Program-made: the position numbers and the translations under genes
Shown: in pieces, positions 5,685 through 32,600 of the stretch
Layout of the letters: the number at the start of each line of letters is the position of its first letter
Position numbering within the stretch: the first letter of the stretch is position 1
Notes under the pieces: generated by a model
The model's input: only the letters and a program-made list of their open reading frames with translations
Told to the model about the DNA's origin: nothing
Database searches by the model: none
Source of the DNA: Laetmonice hystrix
Taxonomy: Eukaryota
Direction: 5' to 3'
DNA: 64,000 bases
NCBI GenBank assembly: GCA_965235115.1
Contig: OZ249436.1
Coordinates: 20,646,001-20,710,000, forward strand

Positions 5685-8600
5685 CTGAAATGGGCGGTAC
5701 GTATAGGAAAGATGATGAGTGTGGTATGACGGGACACAATGACGTCATGCACCACACGTCGCACATATCGCGCTCAGCGGACCGCTTGCGTAAGCAACGC
5801 GTACGTATAGGCAGTGGTTAAACTAGTCTACACGCTTCCAAACCATATTCAGGTGTTAGGTGTCTTGTCCGGGTGGAGGTAAGTATTACGTGGTTTCTTT
5901 TTTACAAGACAAGCTCCACTCTGTCGGATACAAGTACGCTGAAAACGAAGTTCTACTACGAAAAAAAGATTTTCGCTCACCACATGGGAGTTTGAGACGA
6001 ACACGAGCAAACAACACAGGTACACGCGCGCGCATCCTGGTATTTAGGCTTGAACAATGAAAATGCCACACCGCGCCATATTATCGCAGCCATTACCACT
6101 TTACCTCAACGGTATCAGTTGGTCCTCTGTTGATCGATTGCCAGAACTAGAAACGTAGTCATTCAGGTCAATACTTCCAGCTGTGCATGTCAACACTTTG
6201 CATTTGTGTAACGACACACATCAAATCAGTGTGGACTATCGAGAAATAAAGTGTAGTTATGGGAGAACTGCTGTTTTGTCATGGCAATACTGCCCATTTA
6301 ACCTGATCGACTGCTTAGCAGTATATAGTGGTACAATGATATTAATTGGTAAGGTAAAAGCTCTATTATACATTTATGTGTTTGATTGTACAGTCATAAC
6401 ATTTATTTTGTTGTAGCCAGCGGTATTTTGTAAAAGGAACAACAAAATATGACAAATCAGCATTAGTGGAAAAGATTACACACATTTATATTTCGACGGC
6501 ACACTCAACAACAAAACATTAACACATGCTGGAGCGTGGAGATGACTAGAGAGGGAGAGAGGGGGCCGAGAGAGCGATTTGAGGAGTGAAAAATTGTCGG
6601 CGAGAAGGCGTCATGCACTTTTGACGACGGTCCTAACGAAGCTATGGGAATGTTCGGCAGACAGGAGCTACGCCTTTTGCATCACACCTCACCGGTCAAA
6701 GGGCCTCAGTCCCTCCCCTACTGCTGACTGTCACTTCTGAGAGCTTAGAATAACCACAAGGCACTCCCTTACCAATGCAAGAATCGTAGCTTGACGTCCT
6801 TTCAGTATTCCAACCAAAGCCTGCTGTATTTCTTCTCATATGGTCCATCAGTTCTTTACCCCACAACAAGTCCCTAAAGTGGACCTCCCTCTCCGAACCC
6901 TGTCAGTAAGGGCCTGCCACAACGAGGCACTAATCGAAGAGCACACCCCGTTTCCATGACAACCCCTAAATCACTTACTCAAACAGCAGAATAGACAGTG
7001 TGACCACTTCGATCAAACAGAAACATTATTGAACATTGATTCTCTAATGTAAGCCTTTGGTTTATGTGAACATGTTTAGAATAGTAATATTGGCACATCA
7101 TGGAACCATATCTGTGTCAAATAATTCCCTGTTGATTACAATACTCCCTATTTTATTATGTAAGTGTGTTATTCCCTACTTTATTATGTTTCATACGGAC
7201 CAGTATTTATCAAAAAATGTCAGATTTGCCCAGAAGAAGACGGTTAATGGTGCAATGCAAAAGGCCGCGGTTAAAACAGCAGCGTAAAGTTAGGATCCCA
7301 TTCAGGATCCGATTCGACTCATATAGGCCCATATGGGCCACTCCCAATCTTTGTCCACGGGTTTCCTCTATACTGTGGATAGCCCACCTGGGCTAGAGTG
7401 TGCTGGGACCCTTCACTAAGCCATTGACCCCGTAGGGAACACAGGGGATAGACGGATCTTGGTAAAGTCCATGGGACTATTCGAATCGCATCCTGAATCG
7501 CATCCTAACTTCACACTGCTGGTTAAAGCTGCGACTTCAATATAGAGTCTATGCCCAGGTCATCAGTGGGAATGTCATAATGTGCTTAAGATGTGATACA
7601 GCAATGTGCCTATTAAGCTTAATGCTGTATGCAAATAAAACGCCGCATCGAAATGTTTAGATTCTTTTTGAGGCTGGCATTTTATAGTCATACAACTTGA
7701 GAGTCAAAAATAGATCAATCACCGAAATAATCAAAACTTTGGGACAGTTTCCATTGCCATTTAATTTACCTTCTTCTACGATAACTAAACCGCGGGACTT
7801 TGACTGAATGAATGTATTTTAGATACGAAATAAAAAATAACCTCCCATATACGACTGAGCACATTAAAGAGATTTAAGAAAAAGAAAAGAGAAAAGGATT
7901 TTTGAAGTTTAGTTTCATCAAGGACTATAGTAATATGCAAGATCTAACTCGGTTACTCTATACCCCCTTCCTGCTTCGTTACATCTACCAGTTACCGATA
8001 TAGCAGTACACTATAAAATTAGTCTTTACAACTATCCCAAAGTTGCAATTAGATGGGATGACTAGATTTTATTGTCACCCTGAAGGAATGCACCAGATCT
8101 ATGCTTTGAGCTATGCACCAGCTACCAAAGTACGCCGCCAATACAAAATTCTTTAAACAAAACAAACTCTACCAAACAAATTGTCACAGTTAATTTAGTC
8201 AAACTGATTTGTACAGATTGATGCAAAATCCCTTGTGAATATACGTACTGTGAAACAAGAATTTTTCTCTTTGTGCAGTTCTAGTTCTACGTGTTGTCTG
8301 AGTCGTGAGATTTACAGAACCATGGAAAAATAAGAGATGCTGGTCTCTTTAATGTGTTACACATTTTAATTTTACACCGAGAGATTGGAATCAGCACGAG
8401 TTTTTCAAATAAATGCTAAATCAGGACGGATCTCTTATTTTTCCATGAGGCGAGTCGACGTGTTCTCCCAGTGGTGTATGAAAAGCAGTCAGCAGTTCAA
8501 AACGTAAACCGTGAAAAAGATCTTGTTTTACAGTGAGTGACCGACCACTGCTGGACAGGGGATCCAACATGTTGCCTTCCTGGTCACCTGCCGTCAGCGG

Positions 8601-11600
8601 TGCACTGCTCAAAGTCATTTCGTGAAGAAATCGTACTTAATCTGTTGCGTAATTAAACATGCACATTACCTGATCAGGTGGAGGGTCATGATAGGGCTTC
8701 TTTTGACCTCTGCGGGGGTTGATGCCACAGCCGGGCACCGGCAAACCGTTGGGTCCCACGGGACAGGGGGCGTCTAGGCCAGGGAGACCCTATGGATAAC
8801 ACAGCATGCGTTCACTGTCTCACTGCCCTCGGCCATGCTGCATGCGTCTCGGCATTACGCAGCGAGCGCGCCAGCATGCACGATACCCAACGAGTAAATC
8901 GGAACGACTCAAGGCCCACCTTGGGGTTATTGGAGCGCAAGGTCGTTAGATAATTATCAATGGATCTAGCAACTATCTAAGAAGGATTAATTGCATTATT
9001 AGATGAACTACATGTTTTGTTGTAGAAAGACGCAATTCGACAACATGAAAGAAAACGGTGGAGAGAGAGGCGCAAGGCGCACCACGTTCGCCTGTAGAGT
9101 AAGAGAAGAGATTCTATAGACACATTGACTGGGGCGACCACAACAACACAACATACATCTATACAACACACCAAATCCTAAACTATCAATTCAACTGGGA
9201 GGGATGGAGAAAATGGAGCAAGAGTGTCTCAGGAACAGGGATTTGTATAAAACAGCATTCTGCATCAGCCTTTCATTTACGACAAATAAACTTATTCAAA
9301 TTAGTGCTGCATGCTTAACGACTTATTAAAAACATTTTGACATAAAAGACGCACATGACAGTTACAATGAAGATGAGTTTACTAGTTTCCGGGCTAGAAC
9401 TGATTACCAAAGAATACACAAGCACTTCAGTAACAAATGAATGTGTTATTTGCAAAGTAGGTGGAACGAGTTAAAGTTTCATGAAGCACATCTTGAACAT
9501 CTGTAGAGATACGGAAAGTAAGCACACTTAAGCAATTTACATGTAGTTATTTAATACGTTCTCGAGGTTGGAGCAGCTGAACCCGAATGATCCAATTCTG
9601 CTAATCCAGAGGAAATAAAAATAACACTAGGAAACAGTTGAAATTAAAAGATGAGGCAGGCTTACATTCAGTCACTACCACTGTATGCACACATCGTACC
9701 GAGAATATGTCAAGATTTAGAACCTCTGTAATTACACTTTTCTAGGGATATCTCTGATTTCGAGATTTGGTATACACGTCCTCCTTCCATTAATAAGACA
9801 TCAGAAGAGCGCCTCGACTGGTCGGATGTTGAGTGTGTGAGTGGGTAGAGACCTATAGTAAACCAAACCTCGACTGACACGGACTGCGACATGCAGGATC
9901 CAGTGATTGAGGGACGTCCCCACTGAGGACAACACATGCCATGCAGAGAAGCTGCGTCGCGTTACCTCCGGTGGCAACTTCCACCCACAGCCTGGCAATG
10001 GAAGCCCGTCAGGCCCCACGGGGCACGGGGCGTCAAGTCCGGGAATGCCCTGCTCCGGGGAAACACAGGCCCAGCGTCAACACCCGGCAAGGCAAAGCCA
10101 CCCAACGCCACCCATTGAAAGTATTAAACAAAGTTTGGGGGGTCTACTGCTGCTGCTGCGGCGGCGGCGGCTGCTGCCGCTGCCTCTCTACAGCAGGAGA
10201 TGCATCCTACGCTCTATAGCAAACCATTATTGCATTTTGAAGGCATTGCTCCACTCCCAATCTAAGGCAAACAGTGAAAGATTCCACCAGCAGCGATTCT
10301 TTACTAAACCTTCCCCGGCAATGAGACTGTTGATAGGTTATGCACAAAATGCAAAGAGGGTCCTTCAATAAATGACACCAATATGAGATAGAGGCCGCAT
10401 CCAATAGTCTATGTGAGATCGCCAGGTCCTTTACCACGAGTAGGAGTACAGAGAGCCTAATGTCTACAGCGGAGAGCGAGGCGGGTTTACTGAAGCGCGG
10501 TGCACGTGGCCGTACCTTCCCTTCCCATAGTCCATGACTAAAAATTTCATTTTCCTGGCTACTGCTACCTCCTTCATAACTTGAAAATATTACACAACTT
10601 CCCCAATATGTGTTGATTGGTCTACATGAAAACTGAATGAAAATATCGAGAAAACAAGCAAACGATAAAACCAAATAAAATAAAATATAAAAAAAATAGC
10701 GAAAGTTGTCTAATTGCACTTGCGGCGGGAAATGAATTATATTAATAATGCTTGACCATGGCTATCATCATACACCCACCAAAAATCTCTTCCATGGATT
10801 GATATTTAGACAAAAAACGTGAAGACAATAATTTGCCGACATTCCGATGACGGTCAACCAGGTCCGTAATCAAACATACCACCTACCTGTTCACCCTTTT
10901 CACCCTTTATTCCTTTCTTCCCTCGTTTTCCACGGGGACCCTGTAACATGGTATTTGTTACATAATATACCACCCAGAAATACAAAGTCTGGCCGAGCTG
11001 GCAGTGTGGTTCGTTAATTGAGTAAACACCTTCTTGGTTCACACCAAGTAATATTTAGACTTTAGAAAATACGAATCAATTTGGTTGTATCAATTGTACC
11101 ATTTATGTACCACTGATCTATGTTATTTTCAATGTGACAGTAGTTCTGTCACTTAGGTTGTACCTTATCTCCAAAATCGCCTTTAGCTCCAGGTGGACCC
11201 TGAAAATAGGACAGTAGTATTCATATTCACACAACCGATCTGTTATAGTGGCAATCTTTGTTTACCACAATGAGAAGAAAAGTGGTGCATTAAACACTTG
11301 ATTTCAATTAGTCGCAATGTCAAAACCAACTCTCATACTACTTCTTTATTCCTACTAGGACTTATTTATGTGCGTCGTTTCAATCCCCGTGTCGATCATA
11401 TTTCAAGGTCTTCTGCCACACGAAGGTGAAAAAGCCACAGACAGTCGGTGCCATGGGCCTACACACATAACACAGGCCCAATGAGGCGCATATTTTTAAC
11501 AGCCATTTCTCCTGGGATCATGCAGTCGTCCACACTTACAACATTATAAACCGTACACGGCACAACTTAACTCTACTGAAACGTCAATGAAACTCTACCT

Positions 11601-14600
11601 GTCGCGGATCCAGGGGAAAACGGTTGAGTACACGTACCTTACTAATTACCCCCTAACCCTTTAAATGCATGCATGGGGGCTCCCTACACTCCCTGGACTA
11701 CCTCAGTTAGGCTCTGACCCTGCCCCACCGTACATGCTGGGAGGGGTCCACCAGATATCCCAAACTCAAACCATTACATGAAGGAAGGAGGGAGATTACT
11801 GGACTTGGCCGCTCGTGCCTAAACACAGAATTTATTTTGTGGAGCCGATGACAAAATTCATGCTATGCAAAAATAGTATTGTGTAAAATGTATGATAATT
11901 ATAGGCTTTGTCATCATGTACACTTGTTTACGTCCAAACACGCAATACTACAGTTGGCTATAGCTAGCATGCCATTCGAGCTAACCCTTAGGTTTCTGAC
12001 CAATGCACTAAACAAATACTAAACCTACTCCTTCTCCCGATGACGTATGGAGTTTTGTGTGGTGTATATTAATGTCGATACGAAGTTGTTGTACATAAGG
12101 ACATCCGTCGAAGTTAAAGAAAGGGTTTTTTTTAAAATACGCAAGCCAACACCACTGTGGTGTATGCGTACGTGAACGACATGCCAAACAGTTGTAAACC
12201 GCTTACCATCGGACCAGGAACACCCTATATAATAATAATAAAAAAAAACATGTCCAAACTTTCCATTTATAGATACACCATAGTACTTCTGTGAGGCTGT
12301 CGTAACCAGTATAACTAAAGTTACACAATCAACTAATCGTAAAAGGCTCATACATTTTTTCACGGATTTCTATCAGGAACATACAACACCAATGAGGCTA
12401 GCAGAAAGTTCAGTTATGCTAACGTGCCAGGTTTCCCGTCATATAGGCCTACGGGAGACTCACACAATTAAGTTTTCTTTCAAGTTTTCCCACCATTGTC
12501 CATAAAACTCCTGCTCTCTGACAGACTGGTTTTCCTTCACGTCCACCTTTAAATACGTTTACTTTTCTGCCCTCTGAGTGACACACAAACCAACCCTGAA
12601 ATCTTTAACCCAAAGAAACCTACTCTATGCAAATGTCAAAATGCATCATTATTTTGACGGGTTTTTCCGTGATGTTGTGAGTTGGGTTGTTTTACTCACC
12701 ATGGGGCCGTGCTCGCCCGAGATCCCACCCGGTCCCATCTCTCCCTTCTGTCCCGTTGGTCCTGGCGGCCCCTGTCAGAAAGTCACCACTCCGTGTCAGT
12801 TTGAAACCACCAAGTATAACATTCACACCTTCTATGTGAATCCTAACGCTCACCTGAGGTAGATTAACTTAGCCCAATCCCCTGACGTCAGGTGTATTTA
12901 ATAGATAATCTGACAGTGATCTGGACTCAGACGTCGGGCCCTTACTTCCGGTTATAAGAACGACATGCGTGCTTATTAACTTATCAACTCAAACTTATTA
13001 AAATTAGCTCTCATACACGTGTCCACTAACATTGGCAGCTCAATGTGTAAATATCAATGTTTTCTGTCTAGATAATACATTTCATTATATCTTTTGTTAG
13101 TGATTAAGTGAAGCTGTGTATTTTTAAGTATTGAAATATTAAACTAGAGTAGCTCTTTCAATAATGAGTCGTAAAAGAATACAAAAGTAATAGGTGCTTG
13201 TCGGGAGCAAAGCTTTGTCTCTGCCATGTTTTCCAGTCGTTCAAATAATCTGCAAAAGTCTTAGAAATGATAACATGCTTTGCGCCCGTGTTCTGTGTGC
13301 TGCATAATGCAGAGCTATGCATCATGAGGTTAGTTGCTATACTAATAATGTAAGGACCTGTCTCATCAGTCTTCTTACATGTCTCCAAATCTGTAGTCTA
13401 TAAAGATTGCGCAAGGTGTGTCCATCTATTATGTATTATGGGACACATACATCTATTTCCATGTAAATGGCGTTAATTTTGCTATTATCAGTTTCGCATT
13501 ACGACACTGATGAAACAGGCCTCAGACACTTATAATTATTTAGCATTAAGTTACTTAATTGGTATAGCCATTCACCCTCTCCTTATACCAACAGGTCAAA
13601 ACTACAATATACACTATAACTTTAAAAAATTACACCATTTTCAAAATTACATATTTAAAAAATAATTTTTAAAAAACTTCAACAATGATAAACTATCCAA
13701 TGACCTGCCCAAAAATGGTTAAAATAGAAACAATACAATTGTCATCGTCACCGCTGAAAACATTCAAACTAAAAAAAAATCCATGGACTTGTTTGCCAGT
13801 CCGAAAAATGTCTTCCTTGCCGAAATTGTCGCGGCAAAGTGTCCCGGTCGGTGGGATATGAGGATGGGGGAGGGAACTGGGGGATATGGAAGCTCTGGGC
13901 ACTCCTTACACTCTCGACGAGGTATACTTACGGGCGGTCCAGAGGGCCCTTGTACACTTGGTCCCGGTTTGCCGACCAACCCTGTGGCTCCCTACACGAC
14001 ACGACAGACAGCAGTGCAACAGCATTGTCAGGTAAAGCAGCAAGCCGAGGACAATATTAACGTGGAGGTGCTGCCCGATGGCGGGCCTCGTGCTAAAGTG
14101 TTGCGGTGCAAGGGAGCCCGCTTTGGGTACTCGCGGTGCACTGCCCACTCCACACACTGTGCAAGAGAACATTCTAACGGTGCAAAATGGTGCGTCTCAA
14201 AATGAAACTCGGCTGGGGGTCATCAAACTTCTGTTATGTTAGGACAAGGTGGAATGGACCCGTGGCTTCCACACGAGACTTACACGTTACAGTACATTGT
14301 TCTGATTGGTAAATCCTACGTTGATAATTTTATCAGTACTTGCACGGCCTACTCGTCATGCATTATTATTTGGAAGCATCTCAGCCATCTATGAGGAGTA
14401 TCTGCCTCTATACCGACTACCTATGATATTATCTTATCATCGGGAGGGGTTGGTATTACAATACGGGATATCATAGCCGATTCTAACTCTGCTCAACTTC
14501 TATAATAAACAAAGGGGTAAGGGCAGATATCAGACGAAAACCCCACAATCATACTTCTATATAATACTGATAGTATAAATGTGGTACATGGAGTCCTATT

Positions 14601-20600: not shown

Positions 20601-23600
20601 ACGGTCCTATCATCCAATAGACTAAGAATGTAACCTCTTACATCGTGCTGTGGTACTTGAATAAACTAGGAGGTTCGATCCAAGGTCCGATCCTCGTAAC
20701 TATAAAGATTTCATGAAAACACCTCATCATGGAAAGCTAAGTGATCACAGCATGCGGACACAGTGACGGCCAGGAGGCACACGTTGGAGGGACACATGCC
20801 ATGATTGAAGCATGCTGTCACTCACAGGAGGACCGGGAGGACCAGAGTCGCCGTGTAGACCGTCCAGACCGGGCAGGCCGGGAGGACCTTGGTCACCCTG
20901 GATACACCAAACATATAACTCGTATCGTTAACCGTCCCCACGGCATTCACATAACGATACTTTATCTACGACTCTACTCTCATAAAACGATCTTAGTATC
21001 CGAGTGGGAATATAGTCTAGTCGAACCAAGACAGAATTTATCATCCTAAGTCAACATAATCGATTCGCATGTGTCAAAGTCATGCTGATAGAAGCACGGT
21101 GTACCTGAGGTCCTGGAAGTCCGAGGTCACCCATCTCCCCCTTGGGACCCAAGGGACCGTGTGGACCCATGTCTCCTTTCTGTCCTTCAATACCCTGCAG
21201 CCCATCCAGACCCTACACCCGACATACAAACACAATGTTATACAGGACCCCCGACATACAAACACAATGTTATACAGCAAGCTCAGACAGATTCTGCAGC
21301 GTATGACGTCATCATCAGTGAGCTACGTCACAACCACCACCACCATGGTTACGATTCCAAACGTCACATGTTACGAAGCCACCGTCACCAACTAGAACCG
21401 CGATGTTTACTTTCTAACACTCACCTCTATTTCAAACCGAGATTGGCTGTATCGTATCGGTGGCCTGGTTTATAATTGATTACTACCCGTACTATAATAA
21501 TGAGGCATCAGGTGTTCTGAGGCAGCCTGATACTTGTGTTACCTTCTTTCCTCGTCGGCCCCGGTCACCTTTCTCTCCTTTCACACCTGGGGTTCCGGGA
21601 AGTCCAACTTCTCCCTGTAAGTAAGGCGTCCTTCAATAACATCTTCTTCTTCTTACATATATAACGGAAAACTTCCAAGTCTACACGAATCATTCTGCCT
21701 AATGATTAGACAAACACATGCCATTACTTGGTTTAATAAGTGTCATACAATTGGTACCAGAACATGCAGTTTGATTTTGTTGGCATAGCATCGGAGACAA
21801 GCATTCGGGAAGCACAATCTATGGTTTAGCATGAGGTTATTCAATGAAGGTAAAGAAGAGACTATATACAAGGACTGGAATCTACTCTATTCAGTAAACA
21901 GTAGAGTCCGGAGCACAATGCATAAAGAGTATGAGTAGGACTGTGTCACTGTGAAGCTGTTGGCTGTGACGGCAGCAGGTCCCTCGTCTCTCAACGTTAC
22001 CACGCAACCAGAGGGCCTTCATTGTAAACATATTCTTCCAACCATCCCGTCTCACATCTATACACACATTTTGTTTGTCATTACAGTTTTTGCCATCTTT
22101 ACCTCAGGAAATGTACGTAAGTAGCCCCATACACCTACACCACAAGACTTCTACACATTACATTATAATTAGATCCCTAAATCGCCTTTTAGTTCCTGCA
22201 GTGTACAAATACTCAATGATAAAGTGGAGTTCGGGTTTGCCCTCCGATGAGAGAACAACGCAAAGTGTCCTGAAAGGCTTGTATTACACGACCACTGTGT
22301 TACAAGTAGGCAGACGTATTTAAAGAGGACTTGTATGGGTACAATCATAGTGTATACTGTGTGCGGTGAGAAAGCCTGATGAACAACCACCCTGCACCCA
22401 AAGCATGGACTGATTGACGACCGCGTCTAACCTCCTCCTTCTCCTCCTGCTCCAGCCTCGGGCTATCAGCCATCAGCGTGTCGAGCAGTGGCCGCGGCGA
22501 CTGCTCGAGGGAGGCGTCCAAATTTAACACATCTTTAATGTCGATGGCACCGGGCAGTTTCGCGAAATCTATGACGTCATCATCGTCGTCGACGTCGCCC
22601 TCGCCGAGCTCAGCTCGTCGCTCGTCGTGCACTCGCTGGCGTCGGTCGCGCAGGTGCAGCAGGCGCCGGATATGACGTCGGGACAGGAGGCGCACCACTT
22701 GAACGCGACAAGTCTTTGTGCGTTTCTAGTGGAAAGGGATTCAAGATACCTTCGCAGTTTAGACACACTCCACTCATGGGGCAAGTTAAATGGGCCCCAT
22801 TTGTTAATAATCAATCCAGGCTACTTCCTAATGTTTTAGTGGGGGTCAAACACGTTTGTTATTGGATAATTCTTTACAATCCATGACATCAACCTGCCCT
22901 GCTAAATGAAACAGATAATAACATGACCACACTGAATCTATGGCAGGAGGAATTGGTAAAAATCCGCGGATCCAAACAAACCCATTTTCATGCAGACCCA
23001 AATACACACTTTCGATAACCATGCGGTGGTTGCAAACATATTGTGGCCACTGCATGATAAAACATCGGGGTTAATTTGACGGTTTACGTCTACAAACTGA
23101 TATACCGCCCTGACATACCGTGGCGGCCCATGAATTGCTGCAGTCACAACCAACAGTTCACAACAGATCTAGAAGTATAAACTCCCACTTGGTTAGCTCA
23201 ATCTAGATTGCTAGGTAGAAGTAAGCAAGCTATGTTAACTTTACAAAGTGAGAAAGGAATGGAGAAAAGAGTGAAAAAGAGAGTTGGACGAAGGAAATGA
23301 AAAAAATGAGAGCAGATATAGATACAACCAGATAAACCGAGGTACCGAGTGCAAGCTATTCCCAGACCTTTAAGCTGCAGTCACAACGGCTGCATTGGTT
23401 GAAAGCTAGGGATGCAACTTAAAAAGCAAGTTAGAAGAAAAAATAAAAATAGAACACTCTATACTGGATTGTGTTGAAATGAAACTTTTTCAAAAAGGGA
23501 ACTGGCATTGCAATTTCACATTCCGTGTTAAAAAAATAAAAAGGCCAAAATTATTTTCTATTCCTGAATACGAATTTACCTGAATATCTCACAAGACACT

Positions 23601-26600
23601 CGGTGTATGCCGTCAACATGGCACTGTAATCGCCGAGTTACGCTGAGACAAAGCAGATAAACAGTGCACTGTGGAGCAGGAAGGAAGACGTATAGCTTGG
23701 CAAGAAGGCTGGCTATACGAGAACTCTCAGACTGCAAGAACACCTCATTATTGGAAGCCTTTCCAGCTGTTGTGACTGCAGCAAGACCTGGATCAGTCCA
23801 TGGTATAATCATGCGGCCAATCAATTTATGACATGCAATTTGCTAAGATGCCATTCTCGTTAATGAGTGAAAATATACGGGTATGGGCTGTCATGCTAGA
23901 TAGTCTGTTTTATATCATGATATATCATGAGCGTTTCTTCAAACATCCTGTCTTGACTTGGATACGACACCCTTACCTAAAAATTCTGTTTGCCACCATG
24001 TCCTGTGATTTGTTGGCAGACTCCCAGAGAGATTTCCCGTTCAATTACCGGTACCCGGCCCACTCCCGCCCTCCCCTACCTAACCCACACCGACTGCCTG
24101 GCTGTCGGTGGTTTGAGGTATTTCTCGCTCTGACCTTCTTTCCGGGCGGTCCTGGAGGTCCTGGTGGGCCCGGCGGACCCTGGATGAAGCCCTCCGGGAA
24201 GCTATCCCCATTCACGGTTGCATGGCCAATTTCACCCTTCGCGCCCTGTTCACCCTGAAACACCACCAAAATCACCCCTGTTAGTCTCTAGCCGAACGAA
24301 ATCCATTTGAATGGGTACCAACCGACTACCACCCATTCACATGGATTCCTCCATGAAGAAATGCCGTCACGCAGTCCAGACAACAGTCAAGACCCAACCA
24401 AACGTGAAAGGAAAAAGTCAACGTAAGTGAGTGACATATGGCGATATGTCACTGATCCTGCGTTTCTGCTCGGGATGCACTTGGACATCAATGAGCTGGG
24501 GCCACTATCAGAACTTGCGGCAAGGCTTGAAGCATTGACATACATTTCCATTCGCTGTAATATAAAGTTGGACAGTGTCTGATGTATGTCCACTGAAAGG
24601 TCACTCCCACTGAAAACCACTGCGGAAATGTATGTCCATGTTTACAAACCGAAGGGTAGACCAGAACATGCCCTGCATTTGCTAGAGATGTTTGAAATCC
24701 CTGTGACCCAACTGAATGCTTGTCTCAGAGGGGGTCATCCTAGTCCGAAAATAACATCACAGAAACACAAGGAAACAAACGTAAACCCATGCAGTGGAAA
24801 CGACACGACAAACTCATGCGGCTAGGGAAAGAAGTCTTACTTCACGATTTAGAGTCACATCACCAGTCAATGTTAACTATGCCCAATAAAGACTAAAAGG
24901 GCCAAACATTTATGATAATGACAAACATCTTCCAACTTCGAGATTCCAAGGTGAAGAATGGTATGAAAGAATCTGGAACTTTCTAGGCACTGTTTGGTCG
25001 GTGCTGCACTGATACAGGAGCACCTGAGAAACGGCCACATATAGCATCTCACGTAGGTTCTTTCAACGCTGCCTCTATTTGCCCGGCTCTACGCCTTGCA
25101 AAATATTTGTTTTCTGTTCTTGCCGGTAATCATCGATCTTTTGCATGCCAGAGATAAGAATTTAGTTGAAGATATTGTGTCATTTAGTCACAACGGCAAA
25201 CTTCACACATGTGACAACGTATAAGTAAAAATAGGTACAGTAGTAGTGCCGGCAAACTGAACGTCAAAAGTAATTCAATTCGGGCACCTCAAGCACACAG
25301 ACACACAAAGCGTTGACCCCCCTTGAGCTCGCATTCACACTATAATCATGGAGACAGTGTCAAACTGGAGGTGACCAAGGGCCAGACCCATGTCACGTCG
25401 TTTGGAGAGGGCAATGAATCAGATGTACATCTCAGCAAATGCGTCTTATCGTGGCTTTCTGTATACTGTGATCTCGCAAGTGTGGCTGATACACGGATTC
25501 GGACTCACTGCTTTCCCTGGCAAGCCTGGTTCTCCAGGTAGTCCAGGCAGCCCCTCTGGCCCAGGTTCCCCAACCGTACCCTTTTCCCCTTTTGGTCCCA
25601 TATCACCCTTATTTCCGATATCACCCGTATCTCCCTTTAATCCCGGGAGACCAGGCATTCCAGGTTCGCCATGAAATCCAGGCTTTCCTGGATAACCTGG
25701 GTCACCTTTTGGTCCTGGGTAGCCTGGCTCTCCAGGAAGTCCAGGTTCGGCTGGGGGACCTTGGGGGCCGCCAGAGCCTGTCTTTCCTTGTGTGCCATTT
25801 AGGCCAGGTCTGCCCTGAAAGTGTACAGCTGTAGCTTTAGTACTGACAGTATCAGCACTTCTTTGTCCCTTAAATCAACAGAACATAATCAGTTTTCATA
25901 CTGCAACTACCATCGTTCCTCATGAATTAATTTCTTGTCGATTGTAATACGTACTAATCAGAATGACCCATTATGAAGTGCACTATGACAATTATACTAC
26001 CCCCAGCATATACTAGGACTTTCTCAGAACAAAATGATACAAACAACAACATTATCTCTAAGTACATTGTACCTTGTACAACACATCAGATTCACCATTT
26101 TAGCTTTACTCACCTGAGAAAATGCACTAGATAACTTTATACTTTTTTCAACAGAATTGCCTGGTGAATTAAGCATGTATGTCTCTCCAAATAATCAGAT
26201 ATTGGTGCACTGACTTTCCAGGGAATCATGTTAATGACATTCGGCGGTGTACATTTGAAACCCATCACTGCCCTTGGTAGCAATGTTTACATTGCCAGCG
26301 AGCCTGACGACAGACTACACTCATGGATCCTCATTCCGAGACGATTGGCTGATGTCAATTGGAAAGGTTAGAACGGCACACAGGAAATTGGATTGTTACA
26401 GGGCGAAATATTGGCAGGAAAACCCAGATTGTCCGCATACACAATCAGAGAGGTACTGGGTGAGGTGGTCAACGGATCTCACGCTGACCCCAACCTGGAG
26501 GTCAGTCGTTAGGGTCAAGTCGGAGAGGACCGAAGTGGGTAAGTGGCGACACCTATCAACAAACCAAGACACGAGGGTGGATGTCATGAGGGGGGAGGGG

Positions 26601-29600: not shown

Positions 29601-32600
29601 CTGACATCAAAACAGGATAATTGAAGAACAGGCCATGGACATTTCAAAACTGGAAGGTCATGCAAGCACACACTAAAAACCATTGATACACACTGGCTGT
29701 GGGCTGTGGTTGTACGAGTACGTTCAACCTGACACAGGATCCAGCAGTCAGATAGCCATCAAAGACTGCATTCGAAATGGTTGCCAAACTTCTCCGAACT
29801 GCTGGACAAACTTGGAACAAATAAATGGCATGCAGACTGTGGGAGGGAAGATGGGAGTTACACTGTATCTACGCACCATTGGACCTTGTGGTCCAGCAAT
29901 TCCTGGTAAACCTGGCATTCCGGTATCACCCAAGTCTCCCTTCTCTCCTGGCTCACCCTGAACCACGTAAACGTCATATATAATTAGTCACCGCCTCCAT
30001 AAATATATATTACTTCTCCAAATCGACATCTGAGACCACTGGTTAAAAATTTATACCCAGCTCTAACAAACTATGACGGTAATGCTTTGTCCTGAGGACG
30101 CAATACACACGATCTATCCCTGGGTGAAGAAATCCTACATTCCGTAATGATAGGAGTACAGGACAACCTTACTAGATCTGATCGCTAGATTGTGGTACCT
30201 AATCACCATGTCAGTCTACTCAACAATGTACATATTTACAATTGTCTTCGGAAACTTTCCCCTTTACTCCAAAATTTACAAAGTGAAATAAAACGGTATC
30301 TTGGACTCTGTAGCCATTTTAACGCGAGAAGTTATTTCATGCAGGTCTTTCAAAAGCAATATTTAAGCTTTCAATCTCCGTATCTTTAAATACTTACTTA
30401 TCAAAAAGTATGTTCTTTAATTTTAGCTCACAGCGAAAAAAAGGAGAAATTATATGAAAAGGATAAAAGGTCGTGATGAACATTTTTCTCTCCACCAAAT
30501 GTTGTTTAAATACCAGTTATCGCATCATGTCATCGTACTTCAAGGTCAGGGTCACGACCACTCACGTTACAGGGCTATTGTCATACATAGCATTTCGATA
30601 TGTACAATTCCTTGATGTATCTAGGGGGATCTTTGCTTACTCCTACCACAAATATAAAAACGGTGAGGACTCGATGTTAATGAGGAGTACACAATCCTAG
30701 AGTTATGAATTCTGACACAGGAAGACACACGGTTGGGGATGGGGATGGGGATGGGGTTGGCGATGGGGATGGGGATAGAATGCCATGCAGCAGAGTGCCG
30801 AACCTGTGGGCCAGGGAATCCCCGCTTGCCATCAACACCTCGCTCCCCCTTGGGACCTGATTTACCCTATATACAAGAAAAAAACAAATGACGTGAACGT
30901 TTCTGTCATTGTGTGCGGGAAGTATACACGGGGTCAAACCAGAGATCCAATTATTGCGCTCCGAGAATATAACACGAGCGGGTAAACCTCAGTACTGACG
31001 ACAGCCAGGGTGAACCACCAAGTCTATCTCACTGTTACTATTGTAATACATCATGTTTCTTATTATTCATGTCACTCTGAAATTACAACAGTCTGGGAAT
31101 TAGGAATGATCAGCTTCATATCCAACACAATCCAATTTTGCTGAGAGCTAGCGAGATAGTAATTGCATTAAGCATGTTAACGTTCTACTATTACCTATAC
31201 AGACATTTCGTCGCGGGACAAAAACTCCCGGTTCTATGGGTGGTACGAAAAACACCTGCGCGACAGCTGGAAAACTTCACACCACTTACCGGAAGTCCTG
31301 GTATTCCGTCCTTTCCAGGAGGTCCCTAAAAAAGACGAGGAGGGTTATTATTAGGTCTTGTATTTTACTCACATCAATGTATCACATCGCGTCACATCAA
31401 TCTCAACATTTTCTTCTTGTTTCACCTTCTACTTTCACATCACTGGTTCAGGATACCATGATTAATGATATATTTCCCAGTTTTATCGTTTTTAGTTTTA
31501 TGCGAAGGTTTCACTGGTATGGTTTAACAATAATCAAACTTGTACATACTGCTGGACCTGGTGGACCCTGCGGACCCTATAAATACAAGGACCAAAATCA
31601 GAATATTAATATCATCATGGCATCAAACATGTAAAATCTTGATGACCACAAAGTTATAAAATGATCATTTATCAGCTTCGGACAAACCCATTCTTATAAC
31701 ACGAAGAGTAATCTCACATATACAGGTGCTGAAGGGCCTACTTGAACAGAGCATCATACCTTTAAAATTCATCGAATCTCGCTACCACTATTAATTTTGT
31801 ACAACGAGAGCGGGTACGGTATATTTTACCTGTTCTCCAGCCGGTCCTGGTAGTCCGTCATATCCTGGCAGTCCGACTGGTCCTTGGGGTCCTGGTTGTC
31901 CTGGAGGACCTGTCTCTCCTGGTTCTCCCTGTCAGGTCAACCCACAGCGCACGCTATCAGTATCACATAACAATCCAACATCTACTGCTGCTATGGTACC
32001 GTCGCCCAAACCAAGACAAACTTTTCTTTTCTTTATACAAAAACATACCATCATGCCATGATTGCTTGTCCGAGAAAAAATTACCACCTATAGCATTTCT
32101 TAGGTTACGGCGATATTACCAAGTTACTGTGCTTTGTTCATTTATTTGGGTTTAAATTTCCAAATGATTCTTCAACGCATAGGCCTACATGATAACTCGG
32201 ATATTATACTAAACAGTAAAGAATCGTTCCAGTGCCACGAGAAAAGAACAGTAACATGCATGATCCTTGTGTCAATGACAAGTCATGCAACTTTCACTGT
32301 AAAGGCATGCACCATCTCATGATCTGCAATAACAGATTAACCATATCCACACTGTAAGGCTACAGCATCTGCAATAACAGATTGACCATATCCACACTGT
32401 AAGGCATGCAGCATCAACTGACAAACACTTGGGAGGCAGAGGTCAAAATTGTAGGAAGACCTACCGGTATTTTCAAGATGTCTGTGTGCAAAAGTTTCGC
32501 CCTTAAAATACATCCAAAATATCCTGGGAGTTAAACTGTTGCTTTCTATGACGACCTTACCTTCAGCGTCACAATGCGGTCAGGCCACTCGTCCCCGAGA

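What the first reader, a model, noticed from the sequence alone, without database searches (positions are those of the whole stretch)
22432..22725. Candidate 98-aa basic-then-acidic cassette exon with clustered RxxR motifs inside the collagen ectodomain
Seen: a GC/CpG-rich island in an AT-rich intron has a good acceptor (tccctttccactag), a weak donor (gag|gttaga) and a 294-nt open frame in phase 0. It encodes an Arg-rich half (RRHIRR, RDRRQR) followed by an acidic half ([11 protein letters not shown]...EQEEKEE). It lies between ...GPPGKK and GEVGLPG.... Known: MACITs are shed by furin at RxxR sites, classically in NC1. Inference: inclusion would break the helix and add a second proprotein-convertase site, releasing the C-terminal collagen/NC4 part as a separate fragment. 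If the donor is skipped, the frame runs to a stop at 22345 and gives a truncated isoform.
Basis: partly seen in the sequence, partly recalled or inferred. Interest (0 to 1): 0.72.

Follow-up and report, generated by a model that had tools for sequence, protein, structure and literature searches.

The report
Conserved non-collagen exon in worm membrane collagen
The 294-base open frame is a genuine protein-coding exon of a membrane-anchored collagen gene, kept in the same intron in at least three other species. It would insert a charged non-collagen segment into the collagen rod, but whether it is optional and whether it is a protease cutting site remain unshown.

Summary
On the minus strand, 22725..22432 is a 98-codon open frame with acceptor TCCCTTTCCACTAG and donor GAG|GTTAGA. 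It lies in phase 0 between the exons ending GPPGKK and starting GEVGLPG, in a local GC/CpG peak.

It is a real coding exon, not chance, a transposon or a nested gene.
- It is single copy in the genome.
- Related frames lie in the same intron, on the same strand, of the orthologous collagen gene in other species. Lengths there are 348 nt and 150 nt, both divisible by 3, with no frameshifts.
- Against the best-sampled species, introns no longer align and silent sites are saturated (pS 0.84), yet pN is 0.30.
- The first 17 residues are identical despite 11 silent changes.
- No variants fall in the exon within two species.

The gene meets two of three membrane-collagen (MACIT) criteria. A matching N-terminal anchor exon lies 47 kb upstream.

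No RNA data could be reached, so "cassette" is untested. Both splice sites are average for this gene.

The furin inference is not supported. RxxR counts equal chance for this arginine content, and no site keeps its position across species. A junction-made KKKR is conserved and is a better candidate.

The scan had noted this same stretch once before.

The parts
22432..22725 (-). The exon itself: 294 nt, 98 codons, phase 0 to 0. It encodes a non-collagenous segment.
   Evidence: Translation. Relatives P0001 (77% identity) and P0002 (58%). The orthologue sits in the same intron in L003/L004 and L007. pN 0.295 against pS 0.84.
22726..22739 (-). Acceptor: pyrimidine tract plus TAG. The AG belongs to an in-frame stop, so the open frame begins exactly at the exon.
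   Evidence: DNA alignment to L003 starts 2 nt before the exon. L007 has the same cacTAG|AAACG. The score is mid-range for the gene.
22426..22431 (-). Donor GTTAGA, after GAG.
   Evidence: It scores above 11 of 24 real donors of this gene. L003 has AAG|GTTAGC. P0001 ends ...QQEVR then a stop, which fits the same donor followed by intron.
22675..22725 (-). Codons 1-17, [17 protein letters not shown]: the most conserved part, with one cysteine.
   Evidence: 17 of 17 residues are identical to L003, with 11 silent nucleotide differences. L007 keeps KR.C.V.VVR.
22603..22719 (-). Arginine-rich predicted alpha-helix, residues 3-41.
   Evidence: AlphaFold2 gives a helix at 3-41, with block pLDDT 77-85 over residues 11-40. 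It is not significantly amphipathic, and heptad a/d occupancy is only 0.5.
22573..22602 (-). Acidic run [10 protein letters not shown], variable in length between species.
   Evidence: The alignment shows an in-frame 5-6 residue gap in the other species.
22513..22572 (-). Conserved motif IDF...PG..[ID]I.DVL.LDA. Only the I-D-[FL] part is kept in the most distant species.
   Evidence: Invariant columns are listed. A short helix is predicted at residues 63-75 with low confidence.
22432..22512 (-). Variable, mostly acidic tail of the exon.
   Evidence: Its length and sequence differ between species.
22345..22425 (-). Continuation of the open frame beyond the donor, ending at TGA 22347..22345. Read as intron.
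   Evidence: There is no similarity to L003 beyond chance: 382 of 500 DNA shuffles and 434 of 1000 protein shuffles reach the observed score.
24135..24254 (-). Upstream exon [40 protein letters not shown]. It holds a short helix interruption followed by (GPP)4GKK.
   Evidence: Orthologues at L003 8318..8437 and L007 6432..6551.
21543..21614 (-). Downstream exon [24 protein letters not shown].
   Evidence: It is 96% identical in protein to L003 11520..11591. The L007 counterpart is at 12501..12572.

Best explanation
This is a genuine, translated internal exon of a membrane-associated collagen (MACIT-type) gene on the minus strand.

Spliced 24135>22725 and 22432>21614, it stays in frame. It places a 98-residue non-collagenous segment directly after a (GPP)4GKK stretch and before the last long collagen domain. 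The segment has four parts:
- a strictly conserved start, [17 protein letters not shown], with one cysteine;
- an arginine-rich helix of about 38 residues;
- an acidic linker;
- a short conserved motif, IDF...DVL.LDA.

Shown: it is coding, under purifying selection in this frame, and belongs positionally to this gene in several species.

Inferred: it acts as an extra break or hinge in the triple helix. That break carries a strongly basic, polyanion-binding surface next to an acidic segment, and possibly an inter-chain disulfide. Skipping it would leave an unbroken Gly-X-Y run (GKK|GEV), so both forms are structurally possible. Whether both are made is unknown.
For: - Single copy by DNA and by protein in the 627-Mb genome.
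- Codon-position GC of 0.77/0.36/0.71 marks this frame.
- A search of 1.84 billion proteins gave only two hits, both open frames from other assemblies (E 1.2e-29 and 2.1e-13).
- In L003/L004 the homologous frame lies between the orthologous ...[12 protein letters not shown] and GEVGLPG... exons, on the same strand. It is 348 nt, phase 0 to 0.
- Between window and L003 only exons align, and one aligned block starts at this exon's AG.
- It is the only conserved frame in that intron.
- pS is 0.84 (saturated) against pN 0.295. The collagen exons give 0.71 against 0.12.
- The first 17 residues are identical despite 11 silent changes.
- A third species, L007, has a 150-nt version with the same cacTAG|AAACG acceptor. 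It is the top hit of 1820 frames, profile E 0.0035.
- The two haplotigs L003 and L004 differ at 40 places in the intron and at none in the exon, where 5.1 are expected (P 0.006).
- DNA contigs of the window's species show 14 intronic variants and none in the exon.
- The gene carries the MACIT C-terminal motif. A transmembrane plus coiled-coil first exon lies upstream, and its nearest look-alikes are collagen XIII/XXV N-termini.
Against: - No RNA evidence of any kind. No RNA run holds the stretch, and no transcript-derived protein with the exon appeared in the protein search.
- The L007 match is weak on its own (E 0.0035) and rests partly on its position.
- The functional reading is inference only. 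The helix is not measurably amphipathic or heptad-like, the model confidence is moderate (mean pLDDT 67), and there is no family or fold match.
- The exon's GC3 of 0.71 is unlike the rest of the gene (0.38) and unlike its orthologues (0.41 and 0.34). This is unexplained.
Confidence: 0.85

Rival explanations
1. One reading: an optional cassette whose RxxR motifs add a second proprotein-convertase site, so that inclusion releases the distal collagen/NC4 part as a separate fragment.
For: - Phase 0 to 0, and lengths divisible by 3 in three species (294, 348, 150 nt).
- Skipping keeps the Gly-X-Y register.
- MACIT genes are known for many exon-skipping variants, and extra furin sites are predicted in invertebrate MACIT ectodomains (PMC4678570).
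- A canonical R-x-[KR]-R is present in 3 of 4 species.
- A junction-made KKKR would be conserved in window, L003 and L007.
Against: - The RxxR count equals chance for the composition: 3 seen, 3.6 expected.
- Canonical sites sit at residues 26, 105 and 10 in three species and are absent in P0001, so none is positionally conserved.
- The window's motifs lie in a predicted helix.
- Every exon of this gene is phase 0, so the symmetry says nothing special.
- The splice sites are average for the gene.
- There is no RNA data.
Confidence: 0.15
2. An alternative last exon: the donor is not used, the frame reads on to TGA at 22345, and a truncated collagen lacking the last collagen domain and NC4 is made.
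For: The frame stays open for 28 more codons in the window. ATTAAA or AATAAA signals occur downstream in the three species: 695, 643 and 181 nt after the donor.
Against: - The part after the donor shows no conservation.
- Its length is 2 codons in P0001, 28 here and 59 in L003.
- A usable GT donor sits at a codon boundary, where conservation ends, in all three species with DNA.
- The polyadenylation hexamers are no more than expected in AT-rich intron.
Confidence: 0.08
3. The frame belongs to a separate gene nested in the intron, or it is a conserved non-coding element or a chance frame.
For: The composition (GC3 0.71, CpG observed/expected 1.35) is unlike the host gene's exons. No transcript evidence ties it to the collagen.
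Against: - No other conserved frame exists in the intron on either strand.
- Conservation starts exactly at an AG that follows an in-frame stop, so it cannot be a first exon with its own start. There is no conserved ATG.
- The phase matches both neighbours in three species.
- Substitutions fall on silent positions of this frame, which rules out a non-coding element and the opposite strand.
Confidence: 0.04

Closest known systems
MACIT collagens (vertebrate collagens XIII, XXIII, XXV; C. elegans COL-99), as defined in PMC4678570
   Same: The host gene has many short phase-0 Gly-X-Y exons and several helix interruptions. It carries the C-terminal motif [20 protein letters not shown] with two cysteines and an invertebrate-style extension beyond WK. 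An upstream exon encodes a short cytoplasmic tail, a transmembrane helix and a coiled-coil-like stretch.
   Different: The 98-residue segment has no detectable relative in any described MACIT or other protein; only two unnamed open frames from other assemblies match it. The 2015 survey found no MACIT in annelids or molluscs. Other notes of this scan call this genome a marine worm, which I did not test.
Internal non-collagenous domains of collagen XIII and relatives that carry a second coiled-coil oligomerisation motif (Latvanlehto et al. 2003, cited in PMC4678570)
   Same: It is a helical non-collagenous stretch placed just before the last long collagen domain, in a collagen family reported to use such motifs as independent oligomerisation domains.
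   Different: There is no heptad pattern or amphipathicity above shuffles, and the trimer prediction gave no verdict. There is no sequence similarity. The shorter interruption [15 protein letters not shown] in the upstream exon may be the true counterpart of the vertebrate domain; that is my inference from position and was not tested.
Alternatively spliced exons of collagen XIII and col-99
   Same: These are in-frame exons encoding collagenous or non-collagenous parts that can be dropped without losing the anchor, the furin site or the C-terminal motif (PMC4678570).
   Different: Here neither inclusion nor skipping has been observed. Only the coding capacity and its conservation are shown.

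Membership tests
MACIT collagen (criteria of Tu et al. 2015, PMC4678570) | Predicted type II transmembrane topology | tested here: inconclusive
   A minus-strand frame at window-equivalent 101212..100898 (L012 6898-7212) encodes MEKVRPPSPSMGGGGKPRSTCATIGR, a hydrophobic stretch of about 24 residues, then KLRSLQDQLDNLERQ.... Its nearest ESM Atlas clusters are collagen alpha-1(XIII) and alpha-1(XXV), score 0.92 with 201-202 shared features. Its splicing to the window's exons is not shown.
MACIT collagen (criteria of Tu et al. 2015, PMC4678570) | [quoted passage not shown] | tested here: met
   About 30 Gly-X-Y exons lie between 53924 and 10887. Interruptions occur at 32588 ([11 protein letters not shown]) and 24219 ([15 protein letters not shown]).
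MACIT collagen (criteria of Tu et al. 2015, PMC4678570) | Conserved C-terminal motif with two characteristically spaced cysteines | tested here: met
   [26 protein letters not shown]... lies near 10016 on the minus strand. The WK followed by an extension matches the invertebrate pattern described.
MACIT collagen (criteria of Tu et al. 2015, PMC4678570) | Juxtamembrane furin site in NC1 | not tested
   The exons between 100898 and 53924 were not modelled.
Cassette (alternatively included) exon | Both inclusion and skipping junctions seen in RNA | not testable with these tools
   No RNA run was found. The three runs listed are DNA contigs spanning the introns.
Cassette (alternatively included) exon | Length divisible by 3 and same phase on both sides | tested here: met
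   294, 348 and 150 nt in three species. All exons of this gene share this property, so it does not discriminate.
Cassette (alternatively included) exon | Splice sites weaker than those of constitutive neighbours | tested here: not met
   The donor ranks above 11 of 24 real donors, and the acceptor above 10 of 24 real acceptors.
Proprotein-convertase (furin-type) cleavage site | R-x-[KR]-R kept at the same position across orthologues and more frequent than composition predicts | tested here: not met
   Canonical sites sit at residue 26 (window), 105 (L003) and 10 (L007), with none in P0001. RxxR: 3 seen against 3.6 expected.
Proprotein-convertase (furin-type) cleavage site | Actual cleavage | not testable with these tools
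   This needs an in vitro or cell assay.
Alpha-helical coiled-coil oligomerisation domain of collagens | Heptad pattern of hydrophobic a/d positions and self-association | tested here: inconclusive
   A helix is predicted at residues 3-41. The best a/d hydrophobic fraction is only 0.5-0.57, and the hydrophobic moment is not above shuffles. The trimer job gave no verdict.
Transposon or repeat-derived segment | Multiple copies in the genome or a match to mobile-element proteins | tested here: not met
   There is one place only, by DNA and by protein. There is no Pfam family apart from a sub-threshold DUF3459 hit (E 0.08, 13.8 bits against a cut-off of 22). The Atlas hits are at chance level.

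The most novel reading that the evidence does not exclude
A lineage-restricted exon acts as a splice-controlled switch in a membrane collagen. Only when it is spliced in does the junction ...GKK|KR... create a conserved tetrabasic KKKR site at the end of a (GPP)4 clamp. A convertase could then release the whole distal collagen domain with NC4. The basic helix and acidic tail would form a self-masking polyanion-binding module. This would be a second, regulated shedding point, which no MACIT is known to have.
Probability: 0.1. Interest if true: 0.6.

Novelty: new variant of a known kind. Interest (0 to 1): 0.38.

Why it matters
Membrane collagens of this type organise neuromuscular junctions and are shed from the cell surface. 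How their non-collagenous breaks contribute is poorly understood.

This is a well-conserved module of 50-116 residues, without relatives elsewhere, inserted at a fixed point of the rod in a group of invertebrates. The 2015 survey had not found this collagen type in annelids or molluscs.

It gives a defined sequence to test for hinge, binding or cleavage function. It also corrects gene models that would otherwise skip it.

The interest is moderate: the exon is real, but its optional use and any special mechanism are still unshown.

Tried and rejected
- RNA evidence: the one run search returned three runs of one sample. All hold 0.80-0.86 of a mostly intronic stretch, and when laid they are DNA contigs spanning the introns. 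Expression therefore could not be tested.
- Family searches: Pfam gave nothing above threshold. Rfam gave nothing in 21000-25000. The ESM Atlas gave only chance-level rows, with recognition below the mark.
- More orthologues: a second search with the single peptide and a profile search with four sequences found only P0001 and P0002 again. The DNA of P0001's contig could not be fetched. L008 and L010 end before the intron.
- Homotrimer prediction of residues 1-48: no verdict, with score 0.00, the fold itself uncertain and the controls not run. This is neither for nor against.
- Homology of the frame after the donor (RRGRQSV) with L003's RKRRSV was considered and rejected, because it is at chance level.
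- Coiled-coil or amphipathic helix by simple measures: not supported.
- Accession numbers of the L007/L008 assemblies were sought in the paper library to name the species. No paper holds them.
- No fold search was made. The model is one long helix plus low-confidence parts, and matches would be meaningless.

Full report
**What is at the coordinates.**
- On the minus strand the sequence reads ...tccctttccacTAG|AAACGCACAAAG... at 22739..22714 and ...GAGAAGGAGGAG|gttagacgc at the other end.
- 22725..22432 translates without a stop into 98 residues. A basic half ([40 protein letters not shown]) is followed by an acidic half ([58 protein letters not shown]).
- The acceptor AG is part of an in-frame TAG, so the open frame starts exactly at the proposed exon. 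The frame continues past the donor to TGA at 22347..22345.
- The neighbouring exons end ...[15 protein letters not shown]|gtcaga (24135) and begin cag|GGAGAAGTT, GEVGLPG (21614). Both are at codon boundaries.
- GC reaches 0.57-0.61 and CpG observed/expected 1.3-1.5, against 0.72 for the whole window.

**Is it more than chance?**
- GC by codon position in this frame is 0.77/0.36/0.71, a strong three-base rhythm.
- The stretch is single copy in the 627-Mb genome by DNA and by six-frame protein search. It matches no Pfam or Rfam family.
- An exhaustive HMMER pass over 1.84 billion representative proteins returned exactly two hits. P0001 is 83 aa, 77% identical, E 1.2e-29. P0002 is 175 aa, 58% identical, E 2.1e-13.
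- Both hits are unnamed open frames called on long contigs of two ENA assemblies.

**Same intron, same strand, in other species.**
- P0002 sits on two contigs of one assembly that look like two haplotigs, L003 and L004.
- In both, the homologous frame lies between the orthologous exons ...[15 protein letters not shown] (ends 8437 in L003) and [24 protein letters not shown] (11520..11591). It is on the collagen's strand.
- Its acceptor is tacatcAG|AAGCGA and its donor AAAAAG|GTTAGC. That gives 348 nt, again divisible by three.
- Nucleotide alignment of 24 kb of the window against L003 recovers only exons; the introns have diverged beyond recognition. One recovered block is 22727..22675, starting two bases before the exon.
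- A frame-by-frame comparison of the two introns finds this frame alone to be conserved, at E 1e-20. That argues against a multi-exon nested gene.
- A further species was reached through the large collagen exon. L007 is NCBI GCA_022702875.1, JAKGBN010028244.1.
- In its orthologous intron (6552..12500), a 150-nt frame at 11850..11999 encodes KRECKVKVVRRRRALRRLFEEMTSRQHRRSVSNGYEGEDTDEIIDLNDDE. It has the same cacTAG|AAACG acceptor as the window and a GAG|GTACCT donor.
- A profile of the three closer sequences picks this frame as the single significant hit among 1,820 frames of four loci, at E 0.0035. Alone that is modest. With position, strand and acceptor context I accept it as the distant orthologue.

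**Selection.**
- Between window and L003, silent sites are saturated: pS is 0.84 in this exon and 0.71 in seven collagen exons.
- Replacement sites differ at 0.295 in the exon and 0.12 in the collagen exons. The exon evolves about twice as fast as the collagen exons but far below neutrality.
- The first 17 codons encode identical residues in both species while 11 of the 17 codons differ, all silently. This fixes both the strand and the frame.
- Length differences between the four sequences are all in frame.
- The two haplotigs L003 and L004 differ at 40 places in 2.7 kb of intron and at none in the 348-nt exon, where 5.1 are expected (Poisson P 0.006). The difference-free zone runs 9807-10540, wider than the exon.
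- DNA contigs of the window's own species show 11 substitutions and 3 indels in the 3.1 kb laid. All are intronic, and none lies between 21910 and 22961.
- Similarity stops at the donor. The frame after it matches L003 no better than shuffles do. In P0001 the frame ends two codons after the equivalent ...E|VR.

**The host gene.**
- All clean collagen exons in the window are phase 0, start with a glycine codon and are multiples of nine bases.
- The gene carries [21 protein letters not shown] followed by an extension near 10016. This is the C-terminal MACIT signature, in the invertebrate form described by Tu et al. 2015 (PMC4678570).
- About 47 kb upstream of the first collagen exon, outside the window, a minus-strand frame encodes a short tail, a transmembrane helix and a coiled-coil-like stretch. 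Its nearest Atlas clusters are collagen XIII and XXV N-termini.
- Two of the three published MACIT criteria are met. The third, topology, is likely but not linked by RNA.

**Cassette or constitutive?** This could not be decided.
- No RNA run holds the stretch, and the runs found are DNA.
- Symmetry of phase is shared by every exon of the gene.
- Scored with matrices built from this gene's own 24 exons, the donor GAGGTTAGA ranks above 11 real donors, and five real donors also begin GTT. The acceptor ranks above 10 real acceptors. Nothing marks the exon as weak.
- Skipping would join GKK to GEV and keep the helix register, so both forms are structurally feasible.
- MACIT genes are known for extensive exon skipping. 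That is background, not evidence here.

**The convertase idea.**
- The window peptide has RHIR, RDRR and RRQR.
- Shuffling the basic half gives 3.6 RxxR on average against 3 observed, and 1.2 canonical R-x-[KR]-R against 1 observed. The clustering is what the arginine content predicts.
- Across species the canonical motif is at residue 26 (window), absent (P0001), at residue 105 (L003, RKRR|S in its longer tail) and at residue 10 (L007). There is no positional conservation.
- The window's motifs lie inside a helix predicted with fair confidence.
- One thing is conserved. The upstream exon ends GKK and the exon begins KR in the window, L003 and L007, so the spliced junction would read KKKR. That is a possible dibasic or tetrabasic processing site made only by inclusion. 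It is a lead, not a finding.

**What the segment may do.**
- AlphaFold2 with the three-sequence alignment gives a helix at residues 3-41 (block pLDDT 77-85 over residues 11-40), then low-confidence parts with short helices at 63-75 and 80-86. Mean pLDDT is 67.
- The helix is not measurably amphipathic and has no clear heptad. A trimer prediction gave no verdict. I therefore do not claim a coiled coil.
- The best-supported statement is structural. Inclusion breaks the triple helix right after a (GPP)4 clamp and inserts four elements:
  - one conserved cysteine;
  - a very basic helix, a plausible binding surface for polyanions;
  - an acidic linker;
  - a conserved short motif.
- This is inferred from sequence alone.

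**Unexplained.** In the window's species the exon has GC3 0.71 and a CpG excess. Its orthologues have GC3 0.41 and 0.34, and the neighbouring exons 0.38.

**Verdict.** The exon is real and conserved, with no known relatives, in a MACIT-type collagen. The cassette status is untested. The furin reading as stated is not supported. Other notes of this scan call the genome a marine worm, which I did not verify. The same stretch had been noted once before in this scan.

Noticed in passing
window 22432-22725 compared with L003 10049-10396 and L007 11850-11999: The exon's high GC3 (0.71) and CpG excess (observed/expected 1.35) are peculiar to the window's species. Its orthologues have GC3 0.41 and 0.34, and the gene's other exons 0.38. 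No cause was tested.
   Followed up: partly
junction 24135 | 22725 (minus strand): Splicing the exon in would create GKK|KR, a tetrabasic KKKR. Both halves are kept in the window, L003 and L007.
   Followed up: partly
L012 6898-7299 minus (window-equivalent 100898-101299, outside the window): This is the likely first exon of the collagen gene: a short cytoplasmic tail with a juxtamembrane cysteine, a transmembrane helix and a coiled-coil-like stretch. Its Atlas look-alikes are collagen XIII/XXV N-termini. The gene would span more than 90 kb.
   Followed up: partly
window about 9950-10020 minus: The MACIT C-terminal signature [21 protein letters not shown] is followed by an extension. The 2015 survey (PMC4678570) reported no MACIT in annelids or molluscs. 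If this genome is a marine worm, as other notes say, that gap is closed.
   Followed up: partly
window 10887-53924 minus: Every clean collagen exon is phase 0, begins with a Gly codon and is a multiple of 9 nt. Five of 24 donors begin GTT, an unusual base at position +3.
   Followed up: partly
window 24135-24254 minus: The upstream exon holds its own 15-residue helix interruption ([15 protein letters not shown]) followed by (GPP)4GKK. With the exon included, only five triplets separate two non-collagenous stretches.
   Followed up: no
L003 9807-10540; window 21910-22961: The zones free of within-species variants are wider than the exon, by about 150-250 nt on each side in L003/L004 and about 240-520 nt in the window. 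This may reflect constrained flanking intron.
   Followed up: no
window 24148-24181: Other DNA contigs of the same sample match only the GPP-repeat part of the upstream exon and then run on unlike it. Other collagen genes share this repeat.
   Followed up: no
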